DNA of 63,286 bases, counting the filler, from Reticulomyxa filosa (taxonomy: Eukaryota; Protista; Foraminifera), in assembly GCA_000512085.1 (NCBI GenBank). It is 10 parts of 10 records of this genome, joined end to end, with 100 filler letters (N's around TTAATTAATTAA, not from the genome) between each part and the next. Parts side by side here need not be neighbours in the genome. Positions count along the whole stretch, not along the records: positions 49,922 to 57,090 come from ASPP01027226.1; 9 more parts are not named here. The stretch is one strand, 5' to 3'. Position 1 is the first letter of the stretch, and every line of letters starts with the position of its first letter. Positions 49,822 to 57,090 of this stretch are shown piece after piece. The position numbers and the translations under genes are program-made. Under the pieces are notes generated by a model. It did no database searches and was not told the DNA's origin. It saw only the letters and a list, made by a program, of their open reading frames with translations.

Positions 49822-51877
49822 NNNNNNNNNNNNNNNNNNNNNNNNNNNNNNNNNNNNNNNNNNNNTTAATTAATTAANNNNNNNNNNNNNNNNNNNNNNN
49901 NNNNNNNNNNNNNNNNNNNNNTTTTTTAAAACAAATATATATTTATTGTAAAATACTTAATTTTGTATGGTAATAGAACGATAATTGCATTAGCAGTGAA
50001 AATGTCAATAAAAACAATAAAAATTATTTTTATTTGATAAGCATATAATTAAAGTTAAATGTTTTATCAAATAAAAATTATACTGAAAAATACATTAGAA
50101 TGCAAAAAAAAGTTGACACCTAAAATGCCATCTTATATAGATGATTGATTTTCTTAATGAAAAAACAACATTTAATCAAATTAAAAAAAAAAAGAAAAAT
50201 CTACAAATATGTAGTTTTTATTTGATTTTTATTACATATTTGCTGTTTTTTTCAAAATTTATGTCTTTTATTGATTTTAAATTTTGAAAAAAATTTACAT
50301 CAAGTAAATATTAAGTTGACAATGATATACATATCAAAATAAATTATCACATTTTTTGTAACTATTCTAAATCAATTATTAAAATTATATTTTTTCTTAT
50401 ATGTTCATAAACAAATATTTTCAATACTTTTTATTAAGTATATAATAGCTTATATACTAAATTATATTATTTTTCTTTTGTCCCTTAATAATTGTTTTAA
50501 TTACTTTGTTTGATTTAGTAAATCTTTTATTCTTATATTTGTTAATCTTAGTTTATAAATATTGTTTATTGTTTTAATGTATTAAATAATAGTTAAATCT
50601 TTTATTTTGTTATAACTTTATTCAATCAATTATTGATAGATTTCATCAATTTTAGTTATTTGTTTCAATACTTTATCAATGCAGTTAATAACTAATTTTT
50701 TTTTATCCTTTGATCTCCTTATTTCTACAAATGTCTTAATTTTTCAATCCAATATCGCCTCTTTACATGTATATCTACGTTACCACTTTAATACGTACAA
50801 CTCAAATCTATTTAAAAAATTCTTTGCGTTCGAAAATGTATTTTAAAAAAACTATAAAGAACTTTTTTTGGAACACAAACAAACGTGGTCAATAAATGCT
50901 TCGCAAATACGAAAGATTGCAACATATCGAATCAATTAACGCAATATATAGACGTTAATCAACGCACAAATGGTTAAAATCTTCGTATAAAACAATTACG
51001 ATAACATTAGTAGTAGTTTTTTTTTTTGAACGAAAAATCTATCGAGGATTTTTTTATAACAAAAAAACTTGCCTGAATTTTGGAAAAATTGTTGTCATTT
51101 TAAATTAATAAAATAGAATTCTTTTGTACATTTTCATTAATCCTTTTTAAAATATCGTACCTTTTTGCAAAAATAAATAAACTTATCTTATGAGCTTTTT
51201 ATTTTGGTGAGTGAGTATACTTATATAAATAGTATAAGAGAATATGAAAAAAGGTGTTTTCATATACCAATTGGCTATCTTTTTTTTGTCATATCTAACA
51301 AAAAAACACGTCTGTTTTCTAAAGCTTTCATGCTGTATTTAAATATCAAGTATGCGTATAAAAAAACGAAATAAAACTTGACCATTAAATCAAAATGGAA
51401 TCGCACGTTTGCTATCAACTTTTCATTGAAGCTACATATGACGTTGTGCGAATCTGTTTAAATACATTATTTACAATTTGTTAACAAGTCAAACAAACGT
51501 AATCACAAAGTTACTCAGATTTTTTGAAAATATTATTGTATCAAAAAAAGCGTTGCTAGTTTTTGCTTCTTCGATTTTTTGTTCATTGTTTTTTTTGCTT
51601 TAATTTTTTTAAAATTATTTTGTATCAAAAATTCCTGCAATTTTTTTTAAACTCAAAATACTTTAAGTTGAGCATGTATGTCCATTATTTAGAACATATT
51701 TTTATCAACTTATTTTGATATAAAAGCACTTTCTTCTCAAAGCGGAAGTGTGTTTGATTTGCCAAGAAATTTAGTAGGACAGAAGTCAAAGCATTTTTAA
51801 AAAAAAGGGTAATATATAATCAATAATTTAACTTTTAGATTGAGACTAGCAATTCAAGACTCCCCTATCGGAAATAA

Positions 51878-54261
51878 ATGCCTTCATTCCAAGTTTTTGT
51901 GACGATTGAGTCAAAAAAATATCGACTTGCATTGACATCTTTGACCATTGCAAATTTAAAAGATCAAATCCCTAAAGAAAAGGAAGAACACATGTTAATC
52001 CGAATAACTAGCAATGACGGTCACATTGTTGAAACGGATGAGCAGGTTCGGAATGCAGTAGAAAAAGATGATGCAAATTTTATTGCGTATCTGCAACGTG
52101 CGCAAGTGAAAGAGTGGGACGAAAAAGCGATAGAAGGATATGAAGTAAAGAACCCATTGGTACTATTGGCAGGAGCAATGAGATATGAGCAAGAGCCATA
52201 TGTGGAAGCAGCAAAGCAAGACCTCAAAATACTGCAGCAGCTGTTTGAAAGTGCATTTGGTTACAAAGTGCTTACCTCATACAATTCACAAAATCCAAAT
52301 ACAGAATCTCTCACATTGAATGAACTGGAGGCATTGATTGCAAAGCATTGCAATGCATTGGCAGATAGAGACAATCAAAACAAAGACATGTATGATGGGT
52401 TGATATTTGTGTGGTGTGGATATGGTGGTTTTGGAAGCAGTGGCCACACTCTGATCACAAGTGATGGTCAAAGCAAAGCCTTGCAATCCATTCAAGCGGA
52501 ATTGGCGATCAAAACAGATCATTTGCGAGGAAAACCAAAGATATTCATCAGCATTGTGTATGATGAACAATCACATGTCAAACGTGGATCCATAAAAGAG
52601 AAAAAAAAAAGAAGAATCCAGATTACGGCGTGGATGACACCTTGACGATTTGTGTAAGCATTGCACAGCAGTCTGTCTTGTGCAATGAAAAGAAAGAATA
52701 CGAATTAATAGGGAGCAACTTTACAAGACTTTTTTGTCAAATTGTTGAAAAAAATATGAACAAAAGTGTTGGCTGTATTGTTCGTCAAGTCACCGAAATG
52801 GTGAGTGAATTTGTGCAAACAGCTTGGTCAATTTCGACCGATGTGTATTTGATCCCAAAGTCTTTGGGACACAAAAACAATCCGGAAATGTTATGTTTCA
52901 AGAAACATTGGAACAAAAATTGGAGAAAAGCAAATGTAGAAGCAGCCAAAGTGGTAGAGCAAATGCAAGGCAAAAATGAGCAAGGATTGATCATCGTTGC
53001 AAACAATACTTTGCAATGGCAAAAGATGACCGCTCCAAATGCTTCCAACACCGGGAATGATAGCAACACATTTGTTGCGTTGATCAGTAGCGATCAGACT
53101 GAAAAGAGAGTGTTTGGGGATTATATACTATATGTGATAAAACAAATGAAGATAATTCTAATGGATATACATATTGATGGAAATGTGTATGCAATCGATT
53201 GTGAAGTGCAATGCCAAAACAATGTGATAATTACAACCCAGTTGTTTGTGACAAAGAAAGCTATCATTGATCCAAAGCTGAGACAATCCATGCCACTCAT
53301 TCAATGGGATTCCAAAGTGCATTATGAAATTCCTGTGCAATTCCAGGCAATTGAAGACATTGTTGAGGTGTGCGGAAAGAAAAAACTATTCAATGAAGCC
53401 ATTCAACATTTGCAAAAGCATTTGCAAATTGCGGTCGACAAACTCGGGTTTAATTACCCGTACGTCGCCGTTTCATGCAATTTGATCGGAATCACATATT
53501 CCAGTAAAGGAGAACATGACAAAGCAATTGAATTCTTTGAAAAAGCTTTGGATGTCTTGACCAACATTTTTGGGATCAAGTACGCCTTTGTTGCACAATT
53601 GTATCACAATTTAGGCATTACCTATTCTGACAAAAGACAACATGACAAATCGATTGAATACTATAAAAAGGCTTTAGAAATTCGATTGGATGTTTTGGGG
53701 CTCAATCATGTGGATGTCGCTTGGTCATACCACAATACTGGAGCTGTATACTTTAACAAAGGAGAATATGACAAAGCAATTGAATATTATGAAAAATCAC
53801 TGAAAATCAGGCTTAATATTTTTGGGATCAAACACTCTGATGTTGCTGATTCTTATAACAGCTTGGGAATTGCATACAAAAATGCCAGTCAATATGACAA
53901 ATCCATTGAGTGCCACGAAAAGTCACTGAAAATTCGGTTGGAAATTTTTGAGGGCCAGCATAGTGACGTTGCTCGGTCGTATAACAATTTGGGCATTTCT
54001 TACAAAAATAAAGGCAAGTATGATGAAGCTATTGAATGCCACCAAAAATCATTAGAGATTAGGAAGAAGATATTTGGAAATGCCGAAAAACTTGTCGGCG
54101 ATTCAAACTGGAATTTGGCAGTCGCCTTTGGACAAAAAGGACAACACGAAACAGCTCGCAGATATTATGAGGACGCGTGGAAGGTATACAGCATGTCCTT
54201 AGGAGAATGGAACGAAGAAACGATACAAGCAAAAGAAAATATTAAAATATTAAGTGATTAA
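51878..54261 (+). CDS. PB1/ubiquitin-like + inactive caspase-like (C14 p20/p10) + TPR-repeat protein; intronless, one A-run frameshift at ~52600
   Basis: PLVLLAGAMRY..DLKILQQLFESAFGYKV..YDGLIFVWCGYG..LITSDG..LRGKPKIFISIV; p10-like GSNFTRLFCQIV; six full 42-aa TPRs. Confidence 0.8.
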
Positions 54262-54581
54262 AATTGCAGAAAAATGAAAATATATCTTTCAATATACCAA
54301 AGGGGACGGTTTCTTTAAAAAGATTTTATGCACATTCCTAAATTGTATTTGATTGGGTCACCATGTTATATTTGTTTTGACAGTAACACATTGCTTAAAT
54401 TTGAACAAACATTTGGTTAAGTTTGAATTAGACTTTAAAATTTAATTCAAATGTGTTTATTTTCAAAAATATACAGTGTTATGGAACATATTTCGTTGTC
54501 TTGCTACGTTTTTCCAGTACGTCTTTCCCCGCAAACATAGAAAATTTTTACTCGTTTTCATAAAACGTAATTGAATCGAGA

Positions 54582-55444
54582 ATGCAAGCTTATCGTGCTG
54601 CGTTGCGCCATACAAGAGGCATTGGTCTTAGAACTACTAAAGGATTCAATTGTGTAACACGCCGCACTCATGTCTACGACAAAAGGTCCCACTTGCCTCA
54701 GGACGACACCGCAGTGGTATGTGATCATACCCAGCCTTTCCTCAAAAAAATTACCCCCTGTTTTTTTTGTAACCCCTTTCCAAAGTGATCAAAAAAGAAC
54801 TTTGAAAATAGTAATGACTATTACAAAAATGAGTGTTTTTGAATACGTGAAGTCGAAACTTGTTCACGCTTTGAGGGGCCCAAGGAAGGGAAGAGGGGGA
54901 GAGTGATAAAGACAGATGAAAAAGGGGCTAAGTAAGTAAAGTGAGCGGAAAAATCCAAAACATTTGTATGTGTATGTGGACATGACGGGGGGTGATATGA
55001 TGACAGGTGTATGTATCTCCTTGGGACGCAGATACCCTGAAATTGACTCAACCACGCATTCGTCGATTGAGTCAATATTTTCAATGGGCGATATTTTTGA
55101 GTTTGAGTTACGCATGGTTCAAATTCATCATCGTTCGTGGGCGGCTTAACAAAGTCGAAAAATGGGATCACAAAACCAAATACTGGAAGTTAACCCCCTT
55201 TTTTTTATTAAAAAAAAAGTTCATAAAAAAAAAGTCTTCAAAATATCAATAAAAAAAAGTGACTTTCTAGATTTTATGCGTGTTTGTTTTTTTGTGTAGT
55301 GACGGATATTGGGTCCGTGAGTTTCCTGAAGGATTGGTGGTGAAAGAATTATCCAATGGATCTTATGCCATTGAACCCGCCATTACTCCACGCTTATCTT
55401 GGTCAGAACGCTTTTGGAGATGCGTGTATTGTGTCTGTGATTAA
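54582..55444 (+). CDS. Orphan 153-aa protein, putative mitochondrial single-TM protein (exons 54582-54716, 55007-55188, 55300-55444)
   Basis: Three exons splice in frame through GT-AG; Arg-rich, acid-free N-terminus MQAYRAALRHTRGIGLRTTKGF; hydrophobic YFQWAIFLSLSYAWFKFIIV. Confidence 0.7.
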
Positions 55445-56060
55445 TACTTTAAATACTTTCACTCAAAGAATGTTGATATTAACAAACCAATACAAATAAA
55501 CAAACCCACACACATTGCTAACAGAAAAATCACCTCTTTTTTGTTCAAACTCTTCTCATGTGTCCATTCTTGTTGTTTTCTGTGGGCTCGTTCAAGGTTT
55601 CATCTTTGAAGGAAAACAACAGCTTATGAAAAAAAAACAAAACAAAACAAAATGATTTGGAACGAATCTTCAGTTCCAATGATTATATTCTTCATTTCTT
55701 AGTTTGAAAGGTGAAAAATTGATTTTCTTTATATCTGACAAAAATTTTTTAAAAGCTAAATATTAGGGATTTATTCCGATTTTAAAGAAAATTCCTTGAC
55801 CAAGTAGAGGGTTTTTTCGAACAAAGTACCCCGCTGTTGTGGTTCTTCGGAAGTGCATTAATTACGTTGGATTATTCAAAAAAAATCTTATTCTTACATT
55901 CAAAAAATTGACAAAAAACGTTAATTCGATCCATTTCGACGTAATTTTCTTTTATAGATTTGTGAAAACAATAATAGTTTTTTTAAAAGTGCTAAAGTTT
56001 TTAAAAAAACCACTTTTTAAAGCTCAGGTCTGACGTTGAGTAACAAAAGTTGGATTGACA

Positions 56061-57018
56061 ATGACATCATTTTCACCAGAGGAGATTGCACAATTTCAAC
56101 AAATATATAATGCGAGTGATATCAATGGTGATGGCGTGTTGGACAAGGAAGAGGCAATAACGTCTCTGAAAGGTCTTGGGTACAAACACGATGCGTTGAG
56201 ATGGGCACTGAAGAGTGTAAGAAACTTTTTTTTTTATGCCTAAACCTCCATTCACCCACTAAAAAAAAAAGGGAGGAAGAAGATGATAAAATGAGTAGGG
56301 TAAATAATTGGAACGAGACACTAAGAAAAAAAAAAATGGAAAAAAAATTAGGCGGACAAAGACGGTAATGGTTTAATTACATTTGAGGAGTTTTTATTTG
56401 CATTGTCGCAACTGAAGAAAAACCACGGATTTTCCGCGAAAGAAGTGGGGTTGTTCCGACAAGCGTTTGATGCGGCAGACAAGGACAGAAATGGGAATTT
56501 GGACTCAAATGAGTTGGTTTCGGCACTCGAAAATCTGGGTTATCGTCGTGATTCTGCGGTCACCGCTTTGGAAATAGTGAAGTGTAAAACATTTATAAAA
56601 AAAAAAAAAAAAATTGTTGTGTTAACTTTGTTTACATATGTGTATATGTACATATGCATTATATAGACATAAGCATATATGCATATACATTCATATATGT
56701 ATATGTAAGTATATATATATATATATGTATATACAAACAACATTCTATTGTTTGTTTGTTTTTTTGCAGGCGGATACAAATAAAGACGGCACGGTCGACT
56801 TTGATGAGTTTTTAGAGGCGCTATGGAAAGTAAAGCCCGTCGGCCATGGATTTCCCCCAGACAAAGTGTCCGACTTCCGAAGGCTGTTCAACAAGTTGGA
56901 CGTCAACAAGGACGGCCGTTTGGATCAAAACGAAATCATCGAAGGACTTAAACGTTTCGGTTTTCACAGCGAACAAGTCAAGACCTTGTTACAGCAAGTT
57001 TCGACTCTTTGTAACCTT

Positions 57019-57059
<41 letters not shown>

Positions 57060-57090
57060 GATATATATATTACTCTTGTTTGAAAGTGTG
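56061..57090 (+). CDS. Multi-EF-hand calcium-binding protein (at least 5 EF hands, truncated)
   Basis: Loops DINGDGVLDKEE, DKDGNGLITFEE, DKDRNGNLDSNE, DTNKDGTVDFDE, DVNKDGRLDQNE. Confidence 0.9.

What the first reader, a model, noticed from the sequence alone, without database searches (positions are those of the whole stretch)
51878..54261. PB1-like + catalytically dead caspase-like domain + variable TPR array: candidate protist sensor/scaffold
Seen: two ORFs joined by a single A-run frameshift give a ~790-aa intronless protein. Its first ~75 aa look like a beta-grasp/PB1 module (QVFVTIESKKYRLAL..LKDQI..ITSNDGHIVETDEQV). A caspase p20-like domain follows and carries the caspase/paracaspase-type GKPKIF strand, but both catalytic residues are replaced: the GHG/SHG His becomes CGYG and the QACRG Cys becomes SIVYD. 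Then come a p10-like segment, a linker domain and six full 42-aa TPRs. The TPR positions after the VA/VG dipeptide vary between repeats (AVSCNL, AQLYHN, AWSYHN, ADSYNS, ARSYNN, GDSNWN). Established: pseudo-caspases such as cFLIP regulate active caspases, and repeat-sensor plus effector architectures mark innate immune receptors. Inference: this may be one member of an expanded receptor family in which TPRs sense ligand, PB1 polymerises and the pseudo-caspase recruits or regulates an active paralog. That would be an undescribed caspase-based signalling or immune system in this lineage.
Basis: partly seen in the sequence, partly recalled or inferred. Interest (0 to 1): 0.82.

Follow-up and report, generated by a model that had tools for sequence, protein, structure and literature searches.

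The report
Foraminiferal PB1-like dead-caspase TPR protein
This is one copy of a large gene family, found here only in the foraminifer Reticulomyxa filosa, that joins a PB1/CIDE-N-like clustering domain, a caspase-like domain that has lost both catalytic residues, a domain with no known relatives and a TPR repeat array. The single frame break is probably an assembly error.

Summary
The piece is Reticulomyxa filosa contig ASPP01027226.1, and the gene is already annotated as hypothetical protein RFI_31063.

- **Gene model.** Two ORFs, 51878-52645 and 52630-54261, are out of frame across an A10 run (52601-52610). The annotators bridged the break with a 41-nt "intron".
- **The break.** Two paralog loci have similar frame breaks at homopolymers, which points to assembly error. 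No reads covered the site.
- **N-terminal domain.** Residues 1-75 fold as a beta-grasp closest to PB1 and CIDE-N domains (Z 8-9).
- **Caspase-like domain.** It is homologous to caspases; a family profile hits only caspases in the PDB. Tyr replaces both the catalytic His and the catalytic Cys.
- **Family.** Of 50 caspase-like domains collected, only 2 (P0003, P0120) keep both His and Cys.
- **Middle domain.** This 170-aa domain defines the family: 116 clusters, and 18 of 20 sampled were R. filosa. It has no fold or sequence match.
- **TPRs.** Six exact 42-aa KLC-type TPRs follow.

Function as a non-catalytic scaffold or sensor is inferred. The immune-receptor reading is untested. Caspase-like proteins in Reticulomyxa were already published; this domain architecture was not found in the literature searched.

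The parts
51878..54261 (+). Whole gene (RFI_31063 locus). Best model is a single exon of about 793 codons with one frame break.
   Evidence: ORFs. Identity to P0004 and the contig ASPP01027226.1. Start and stop agree with paralogs.
51878..52102 (+). N-terminal beta-grasp domain (residues 1-75), PB1/CIDE-N-like.
   Evidence: AF2 pLDDT 83. VIA Z 9.1-8.0 to MEK5, Bem1, MEKK2/3, PKCiota and p62 PB1 and to FSP27 and DREP2 CIDE-N; ubiquitin-like proteins score lower. Foldseek top hit is Bem1 PB1. The family profile hits Bem1 PB1 in PDB sequences at E 0.035.
52142..52600 (+). Caspase-like large-subunit (p20-like) part, frame of ORF1.
   Evidence: Pfam Peptidase_C14 E 0.0032 on residues 96-225. Alignment A1. 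Family profile against the PDB hits only caspases. P0003 scores Peptidase_C14 3.5e-19.
52421..52423 (+). Tyr182 codon (TAT) at the catalytic His position (motif CGYG).
52559..52561 (+). Tyr228 codon (TAT) at the catalytic Cys position (motif SIVYD).
52601..52610 (+). A10 homopolymer, the most likely site of the frame break between ORF1 and ORF2. It lies in the variable linker between the two caspase subunits.
   Evidence: Similar homopolymer-associated breaks occur in paralog loci L002 and L003. Not covered by reads.
52612..52896 (+). Caspase-like small-subunit (p10-like) part, frame of ORF2.
   Evidence: Aligned with paralogs in A1. The family profile aligns this part to Dronc residues about 364-429.
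52897..53379 (+). Middle domain of about 160-170 aa, the defining module of the family. Mixed alpha/beta with no known relatives.
   Evidence: Alignment A3 has 10 invariant columns. AF2 pLDDT 84.6, pTM 0.80. No Pfam hit, no PDB sequence hit, no Foldseek hit, best VIA Z 3.8, Atlas TM at most 0.42. 116 clusters in 1.84 billion representatives; 18 of 20 sampled are R. filosa.
53380..53460 (+). Helical cap or partial repeat leading into the TPR array.
   Evidence: Helix 144-166 of the mid-domain model. Sequence.
53461..54216 (+). Six tandem 42-aa TPR units (KLC/TPR_12 type).
   Evidence: Pfam TPR_12 5.8e-77 and TPR_10 9.3e-50. Exact 42-aa register. No DNA-level tandem repeat.
52259..52303 (+). Annotated 'intron 1' of RFI_31063. 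It is in fact conserved coding sequence (15 aa of the p20-like part).
   Evidence: P0004 lacks 15 residues that paralogs keep, including nearly invariant columns. A public contig from run X1 lies colinear over 52075-52332.
52558..52598 (+). Annotated 41-nt GT..AG 'intron 2' of RFI_31063, used to bridge the frames. It removes the Cys-position Tyr and part of the linker.
   Evidence: P0004 against the ORFs. Paralogs carry 18-29 residues here. Introns inferred by eye from the sequence of the neighbouring gene are about 135 and 189 nt.

Best explanation
Shown:
- The locus is a member of a large family found here only in Reticulomyxa filosa.
- Its domain order is: PB1/CIDE-N-like beta-grasp, caspase-homologous domain, orphan alpha/beta middle domain, six KLC-type TPRs.
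- In this copy the catalytic His and Cys are both Tyr, so it cannot be a cysteine protease of the caspase type.
- It sits in the large, mostly inactive clade of the family.

Inferred with fair confidence:
- The gene is one exon.
- The single frame break at the A10 run is a homopolymer length error of the draft assembly, not a real lesion.
- The two internal 'introns' of the public model are annotation patches.

Inferred by analogy, low confidence:
- The protein acts as a non-catalytic scaffold or adaptor.
- The beta-grasp domain drives head-to-tail homo- or hetero-oligomerisation, as PB1 and CIDE-N domains do.
- The dead caspase domain pairs with other family members, possibly the few that keep His and Cys.
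- The TPR array binds a peptide ligand or cargo.
- The role of the middle domain is unknown.
For: - Identity of the locus.
- Caspase homology and the Tyr/Tyr replacement.
- N-terminal domain fold. Weak Pfam hits to beta-grasp families: GRHL1_C in 5 of 29 members and CIDE-N in 1.
- Middle domain is conserved, has no known relatives and is found almost only in R. filosa.
- Family architecture among 131 proteins: 34 N-domain/caspase/mid, 28 N-domain/mid, 12 caspase/mid, 45 mid only.
- Catalytic state over 50 caspase-like domains: His position Y 28, H 13; Cys position Y 27, C 5, W 5. Only P0003 and P0120 keep both, and both have the same domain order.
- Gene model: residues removed by the annotated introns are conserved in paralogs.
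- Paralog loci L002 and L003 show the same kind of frame switch, at an A9 run and at a G4/A7 run, inside conserved coding sequence.
- ORF2 stays open for 543 codons after the break.
Against: - No read evidence covers the A10 run, so a real frameshift (pseudogene or null allele) is not excluded.
- No expression data were found.
- ORF1 alone is below the Pfam cut-off.
- No member of the N-domain alignment hits the Pfam PB1 model. PB1 is therefore a fold-level resemblance.
- Nothing tested here bears on oligomerisation, heterodimerisation or ligand binding.
Confidence: 0.7

Rival explanations
1. The frameshift is real. This copy is a recently inactivated pseudogene, or a null allele, in a fast-turnover multigene family.
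For: The frame break is in the deposited sequence. Homopolymers are also mutation hot spots in vivo. The family is very large, and many members are partial or rearranged models. No reads cover the site.
Against: There is only one lesion, sited exactly in an A10 run. Both flanking ORFs are fully open and conserved. Two of two other paralog loci inspected show the same kind of homopolymer-associated break, which fits a systematic assembly error better than three independent recent inactivations.
Confidence: 0.2
2. One reading: the family is an innate-immune or cell-death receptor repertoire. The TPRs sense ligands, the PB1-like domain polymerises, and the dead caspases recruit or regulate the rare active caspases.
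For: - The family is large, found here only in this lineage, and has modular N-terminal composition.
- Variability is concentrated on one face of TPR helix A.
- Active-site-intact members share the architecture.
- The nearest folds of the N-terminal domain include CIDE-N, a filament-forming domain of apoptotic nucleases.
Against: - There is no NTPase switch module, no death-fold domain and no known immune domain.
- The TPR units are old and diverged, not the near-identical repeats typical of rapidly diversifying receptors.
- Loss of His and Cys is recurrent and mutationally cheap.
- No functional, expression or infection data are available.
Confidence: 0.2
3. The family are cytoskeletal or transport adaptors. 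The KLC-type TPRs bind cargo or motors in the very active microtubule transport system of Reticulomyxa, and the dead caspase and PB1-like domains serve as assembly modules.
For: The TPRs are of the kinesin-light-chain/NPHP3 type (TPR_12, TPR_10, TPR_NPHP3). UniRef names one family member 'Kinesin light chain'.
Against: No KLC heptad-repeat region or any motor-binding element was detected. The TPR_12 type is widespread in unrelated proteins. The idea rests on general knowledge of the organism, not on a test done here.
Confidence: 0.1
4. The public gene model RFI_31063 (795 aa, with short introns at 52259-52303 and 52558-52598 and a 3' extension to 54420) is correct.
For: The second intron has GT..AG ends, and the model is in GenBank. 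The mean annotated intron length in this genome is 87 nt (PMC13746701).
Against: Both 'introns' remove residues that align with conserved paralog sequence, including nearly invariant columns and the Cys-position residue. A public contig is colinear across the first one. The paralogs aligned end close to where the ORF stops, at 54261, so the 3' extension is unsupported. Other models in the family use the same patching at homopolymer breaks.
Confidence: 0.03

Closest known systems
Animal caspases (MEROPS C14A; e.g. Dronc, caspase-3)
   Same: - They are the only PDB proteins hit by the family profile.
- The large- and small-subunit order is shared.
- The strand before the catalytic Cys (KPK-hydrophobic) and the small-subunit helix motif are conserved.
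- Intact paralogs carry GHG and ACRG motifs.
   Different: - This copy has Tyr at both catalytic positions.
- There is no CARD or DED prodomain; a PB1/CIDE-N-like beta-grasp takes that place.
- A C-terminal orphan domain and a TPR array are fused.
- The organism is a rhizarian protist.
Pseudo-caspases such as cFLIP (CFLAR)
   Same: A caspase-homologous domain without the catalytic Cys, coexisting with active paralogs in the same genome.
   Different: - cFLIP has tandem DEDs and a defined partner (caspase-8); no partner is known here.
- Here the inactive state is the rule (48 of 50 domains), not the exception.
- Heterodimerisation was not tested.
PB1 domains (Bem1, p62, MEK5/MEKK2-3, PKCiota) and CIDE-N domains (FSP27, DREP2, DFF40/45)
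   Same: The beta-grasp fold matches at Z 8-9.1 and rmsd about 2-2.6 A over 68-73 residues. An acidic stretch lies where the PB1 acidic (OPCA) motif or the CIDE-N acidic patch lies. Bem1 PB1 is also the best relevant hit by sequence profile.
   Different: No Pfam PB1 hit and only one weak CIDE-N hit among 29 members. A canonical OPCA motif or basic-cluster Lys was not established. Polymerisation was not tested.
Bacterial TPR-CHAT (Csx29 of Craspase) and other TPR-fused caspase-like peptidases
   Same: A clan CD caspase-like domain fused to TPR repeats that act as a regulatory or binding module.
   Different: - In TPR-CHAT the TPRs are N-terminal and the peptidase is active.
- The CHAT family is distinct from C14A.
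- It works with a CRISPR effector.
- No homology beyond the shared fold classes is implied.
STAND/NLR-type receptors with TPR sensor arms
   Same: Three-part logic: N-terminal interaction or effector domain, central domain, C-terminal repeat array. The family is large, lineage-specific and has modular N-termini.
   Different: The central domain is not an NTPase: no P-loop, no NACHT or NB-ARC hit, and no fold match.

Membership tests
Peptidase C14 / caspase-hemoglobinase fold | Significant sequence match to the family model | tested here: met
   ORF1 alone scores E 0.0032, 17.6 bits, below the 21.4 cut-off. It is 34% identical (blastp E 5e-44) to P0003, which scores 3.5e-19 over model positions 4-223 of 233. 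The family profile hits only caspases in the PDB, best 4.5e-5.
Peptidase C14 / caspase-hemoglobinase fold | Catalytic His-Cys dyad | tested here: not met
   Tyr182 and Tyr228 occupy the positions aligned to the Dronc catalytic His and Cys. The protein is a homologue but not an active member.
Peptidase C14 / caspase-hemoglobinase fold | Three-dimensional alpha/beta caspase fold of this copy | not tested
Peptidase C14 / caspase-hemoglobinase fold | Large-subunit part followed by small-subunit part | tested here: met
   The profile alignment runs from the His strand through the small-subunit helix of Dronc (residues 262-429). The window's second piece aligns with the paralogs' small-subunit part.
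PB1 domain | Beta-grasp fold closest to PB1 structures | tested here: met
   Model pLDDT 83. Z 9.1 to MEK5 PB1, 9.0 to Bem1, 8.4 to MEKK2 and 8.0 to PKCiota and p62, with rmsd 1.9-2.6 A. Foldseek top hit is Bem1 PB1 with TM 0.65/0.69.
PB1 domain | Match to the Pfam PB1 sequence model | tested here: not met
   None of 29 members lists PB1 at E up to 10. The only support is a marginal profile hit to Bem1 PB1 in PDB sequences, E 0.035.
PB1 domain | Acidic OPCA motif and/or conserved basic Lys used for head-to-tail pairing | tested here: inconclusive
   The consensus has a conserved acidic stretch (ITD..G..IETD) at the place aligned to the Bem1 region, and Lys residues in the first hairpin. Equivalence to OPCA or the basic cluster was judged by eye only.
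CIDE-N domain | Fold and sequence match | tested here: inconclusive
   Z 8.6 to FSP27, 8.2 to CIDEC and 8.0 to DREP2, tied with PB1. Pfam CIDE-N E 0.0064 in 1 of 29 members.
TPR (TPR_12 / KLC type) | Tandem helix-turn-helix repeats matching the TPR models | tested here: met
   TPR_12 5.8e-77 and TPR_10 9.3e-50. Six units in exact 42-aa register.
NLR/STAND receptors | Central P-loop NTPase (NACHT or NB-ARC) | tested here: not met
   No NTPase family in Pfam scans. No Walker A motif was seen on reading the family alignment of the middle domain. The middle domain has no fold match.
cFLIP-like regulatory pseudo-caspase | Heterodimerises with and regulates an active caspase paralog | not testable with these tools
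   Active-site-intact paralogs exist (P0003, P0120), but no interaction data are available.

The most novel reading that the evidence does not exclude
Foraminifera carry a caspase-based signalling or cell-death system of their own design, built from a family of more than 100 members. A PB1/CIDE-N-like polymerising prodomain replaces CARD or DED. An orphan central domain replaces the NOD. KLC-type TPRs act as sensors. Mostly dead caspase domains tune a few active ones (the P0003/P0120 type).
Probability: 0.2. Interest if true: 0.8.

Novelty: new variant of a known kind. Interest (0 to 1): 0.55.

Why it matters
True caspases (C14A) are usually treated as animal proteins. Reticulomyxa is the known protist exception, and its sequences are used to root caspase trees.

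This work shows that most of these foraminiferal caspase homologues:
- are catalytically dead;
- carry a PB1/CIDE-N-like prodomain instead of a death-fold domain;
- are fused to a domain with no known relatives, found here only in this lineage, and to TPRs.

That changes how they should be used as outgroups. It also gives a concrete, testable case of large-scale pseudo-enzyme expansion. In addition, it flags systematic gene-model errors (homopolymer frame breaks patched as short introns) in the only public foraminiferal genome annotation.

Tried and rejected
- **Reads across the A-run.** The run search found one run with a small share of the words, and a single 258-nt contig (52075-52332) that does not reach the break. 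The frameshift therefore could not be checked directly.
- **Genome paper.** The Reticulomyxa genome paper is not held in the library, so the sequencing chemistry could not be cited.
- **ORF1 alone against PDB sequences.** Nothing meaningful.
- **Middle domain.** All of these were blank or weak:
  - Pfam and PDB sequence profile.
  - Foldseek against the PDB.
  - VIA wide search: best Z 3.8, with several cytidine-deaminase-fold chains at Z 3.0-3.6. The conserved Cys residues lie in strands and no His/Cys-x-Glu plus Pro-Cys-x-x-Cys motif is present, so a deaminase reading was rejected.
  - ESM Atlas by shape, TM at most 0.42.
  - ESM Atlas by features, 0.88 to retrotransposon Pol beta-barrel clusters with low shared features, treated as chance.
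- **A true short intron as the frame bridge.** Considered and rejected, because the 'intron' aligns as coding sequence with paralogs.
- **Frameshift just after the Trp codon at 52631.** Rejected, because the ORF2 frame already matches paralogs from 52621 on.
- **Tyr/Tyr as a selected new dyad.** Downgraded, because both changes are single transitions and recur on the tree.
- **Rfam and small ORFs.** Rfam gave nothing anywhere on the piece. Pfam gave nothing for the small ORFs at 54582-55249.
- **Bacterial promoter and terminator scan.** Not above shuffled expectation, and not relevant to a eukaryote.
Full report
**What the piece is.** The 7169-base piece (49922-57090) is contig ASPP01027226.1 of the Reticulomyxa filosa draft genome, GCA_000512085.1. 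The finding lies on an annotated gene, hypothetical protein RFI_31063 (P0004, 795 aa). Coding GC is about 0.36-0.41, against 0.15-0.26 upstream.

**The observation.** ORF1 (51878-52645, 255 aa) and ORF2 (52630-54261, 543 aa) are on the + strand, two frames apart. Both frames are open between 52567 and 52645, and that stretch holds an A10 run at 52601-52610. Pfam gives TPR_12 at 5.8e-77 on ORF2 and a sub-threshold Peptidase_C14 match on ORF1 residues 96-225 (E 0.0032).

**Gene model.**
- The public model joins the ORFs with a 41-nt GT..AG 'intron' (52558-52598). It also removes 45 in-frame bases (52259-52303) and adds a 3' extension.
- Aligned with paralogs, both removed stretches are conserved coding sequence. 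The first holds nearly invariant columns. The second holds the residue at the catalytic Cys position and part of the variable inter-subunit linker, where paralogs have 18-29 residues.
- A public contig is colinear over 52075-52332.
- Introns I inferred by eye from the sequence of the neighbouring EF-hand gene are about 135 and 189 nt.
- The ORF2 frame matches paralogs from about 52621, and the ORF1 frame up to the A-run. The break is therefore best placed in the A10 run.

**Is the break real?**
- No reads cover it.
- In two paralog loci I inspected, the annotated proteins also skip conserved residues, exactly where the reading frame switches.
- In L002 (P0009) the switch is at an A9 run. In L003 (P0022) it is at a G4/A7 stretch. 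Family-consensus sequence continues in the other frame in both cases.
- Three of three loci with homopolymer-associated breaks inside intact, conserved coding sequence point to assembly error rather than repeated recent pseudogenisation.
- I put about 0.7 on an intact gene and about 0.2 on a real frameshift. The rest covers other possibilities, including slippage on the A-run.

**N-terminal domain.**
- An alignment of 29 family N-termini (A2) gave an AF2 model with pLDDT 83 and beta-beta-alpha-beta-beta-alpha-beta order.
- The Foldseek top hit is Bem1 PB1 (TM 0.65/0.69).
- In the VIA re-alignment the top 13 chains are all PB1 (MEK5, Bem1, MEKK2/3, PKCiota, p62) or CIDE-N (FSP27/CIDEC, DREP2) at Z 8.0-9.1 and rmsd about 2-2.6 A. 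Ubiquitin-like proteins score lower.
- The family profile finds Bem1 PB1 among PDB sequences at E 0.035.
- Pfam gives no PB1 hit, one weak CIDE-N hit and five weak GRHL1_C hits.
- Verdict: a PB1/CIDE-N-like fold, with family membership unproven.

**Caspase-like domain.**
- Paralog P0003 matches Peptidase_C14 at 3.5e-19 over the whole model and is 34% identical to ORF1.
- A 20-row family profile hits only caspases in the PDB: Dronc at 4.5e-5, then caspase-3, -7 and -6.
- The alignment runs through the small-subunit helix.
- In it, the family Tyr of CGYG pairs with the catalytic His, and the Tyr of the K-I-T-Y-K type strand pairs with the catalytic Cys.
- In the window these are Tyr182 and Tyr228, both TAT codons.

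**The family.**
- The middle-domain profile (A3) found 116 clusters among 1.84 billion representatives, 77 of them at E up to 1e-30.
- Eighteen of 20 sampled clusters are R. filosa. The other two are repeat-like hits from one SRA assembly.
- Among 131 collected proteins: 34 have N-domain/caspase/mid order, 28 have N-domain/mid without the caspase domain, 12 have caspase/mid, and 45 have the middle domain only. Many are partial models.
- Over 50 caspase-like domains, the His position is Y 28, H 13 and N 3. The Cys position is Y 27, C 5 and W 5.
- Only P0003 and P0120 keep both residues, and both have the same domain order.
- On a quick tree these two sit in a well-supported six-member subclade together with close dead relatives. 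The window sits in the large, poorly resolved, mostly dead clade.
- The His state changes at least 13 times and the Cys state at least 5 times on that tree.
- His (CAY) to Tyr (TAY) and Cys (TGY) to Tyr (TAY) are each single GC-to-AT transitions. Recurrent Tyr can therefore be mutational drift after loss of catalysis, not necessarily a selected dyad.

**Middle domain.** It is the most conserved part (47% mean column identity, 10 invariant columns). It models confidently (pLDDT 84.6, pTM 0.80). It has no Pfam hit, no PDB sequence hit and no convincing fold match, and no P-loop. I treat it as an orphan domain of unknown role.

**TPRs.** Six units of exactly 42 aa are of the KLC/NPHP3 type. There is no DNA-level tandem repeat, so they are old. 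Across 40 family units, entropy peaks at unit positions 4, 7, 11, 14/15, 35 and 39. The spacing of positions 4-15 fits one face of helix A; 35 and 39 I take to be loop positions. This fits a binding surface but does not show positive selection.

**Mechanism.**
- Shown: the architecture, the loss of catalytic residues, the family size and the coexistence with intact paralogs.
- Inferred: a non-catalytic scaffold. The beta-grasp domain oligomerises, the dead caspase domain pairs with relatives, and the TPRs bind a ligand or cargo.
- The immune or cell-death receptor reading and a transport-adaptor reading are both open, and neither was tested.

**Literature.** Caspase-like proteins of Reticulomyxa that group with animal caspases are published (PMC5982838) and are used as an outgroup (PMC10959488). 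That paper does not mention TPR, catalytic residues or inactivity. Searches for Reticulomyxa or foraminifera with TPR, caspase or pseudo-caspase found no description of this architecture.

The joined read-through protein was not submitted to any tool; its two pieces were searched separately. The caspase-like domain of this copy was not folded.

Noticed in passing
window 56061-57090 (+): The neighbouring gene encodes a multi-EF-hand protein with introns of about 135 and 189 nt, inferred by eye. A further EF-hand exon at about 56770-57000 lies beyond the annotated end (56666). The gene probably runs off the contig, so the public 156-aa model looks truncated.
   Followed up: partly
L002 4340-4365 and L003 4210-4270: Paralog gene models RFI_15137 (P0009) and RFI_12347 (P0022) also skip conserved residues, exactly where the frame switches at an A9 run and at a G4/A7 stretch. 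Homopolymer frame breaks patched as short introns may be common in this annotation, and may lower its reported mean intron length (87 nt).
   Followed up: partly
window 52025-52036 (N-terminal domain residues about 50-53) and alignment A2: A conserved (I/V)-E-T-D tetrapeptide sits in the N-terminal domain of most family members. It equals the textbook preferred cleavage motif of caspase-8-type enzymes. It lies in the structured acidic stretch, so the conservation may be purely structural.
   Followed up: no
P0109 (RFI protein, 846 aa): This model reads middle domain, TPRs, then N-terminal domain and a Pfam-significant Peptidase_C14 domain (2e-12). It is probably two adjacent family genes fused by the annotation, which suggests that family members lie in tandem.
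   Followed up: no
P0095 and P0127 (from SRR5664279): These are the only non-Reticulomyxa hits of the middle-domain profile among the clusters sampled. They match profile positions about 104-146 in 15 and 6 tandem stretches, as if the beta-hairpin part of the domain resembled a repeat protein from an unidentified organism.
   Followed up: no
window 54582-55444: A stretch of raised GC (0.38-0.42) holds several 50-116 aa ORFs on both strands. It has no annotated gene, no Pfam hit and no Rfam hit.
   Followed up: partly
L003 5420-8122 (-): Next to paralog RFI_12347 lies a gene whose product carries both HSP70 and PARP Pfam domains, an unusual combination.
   Followed up: no
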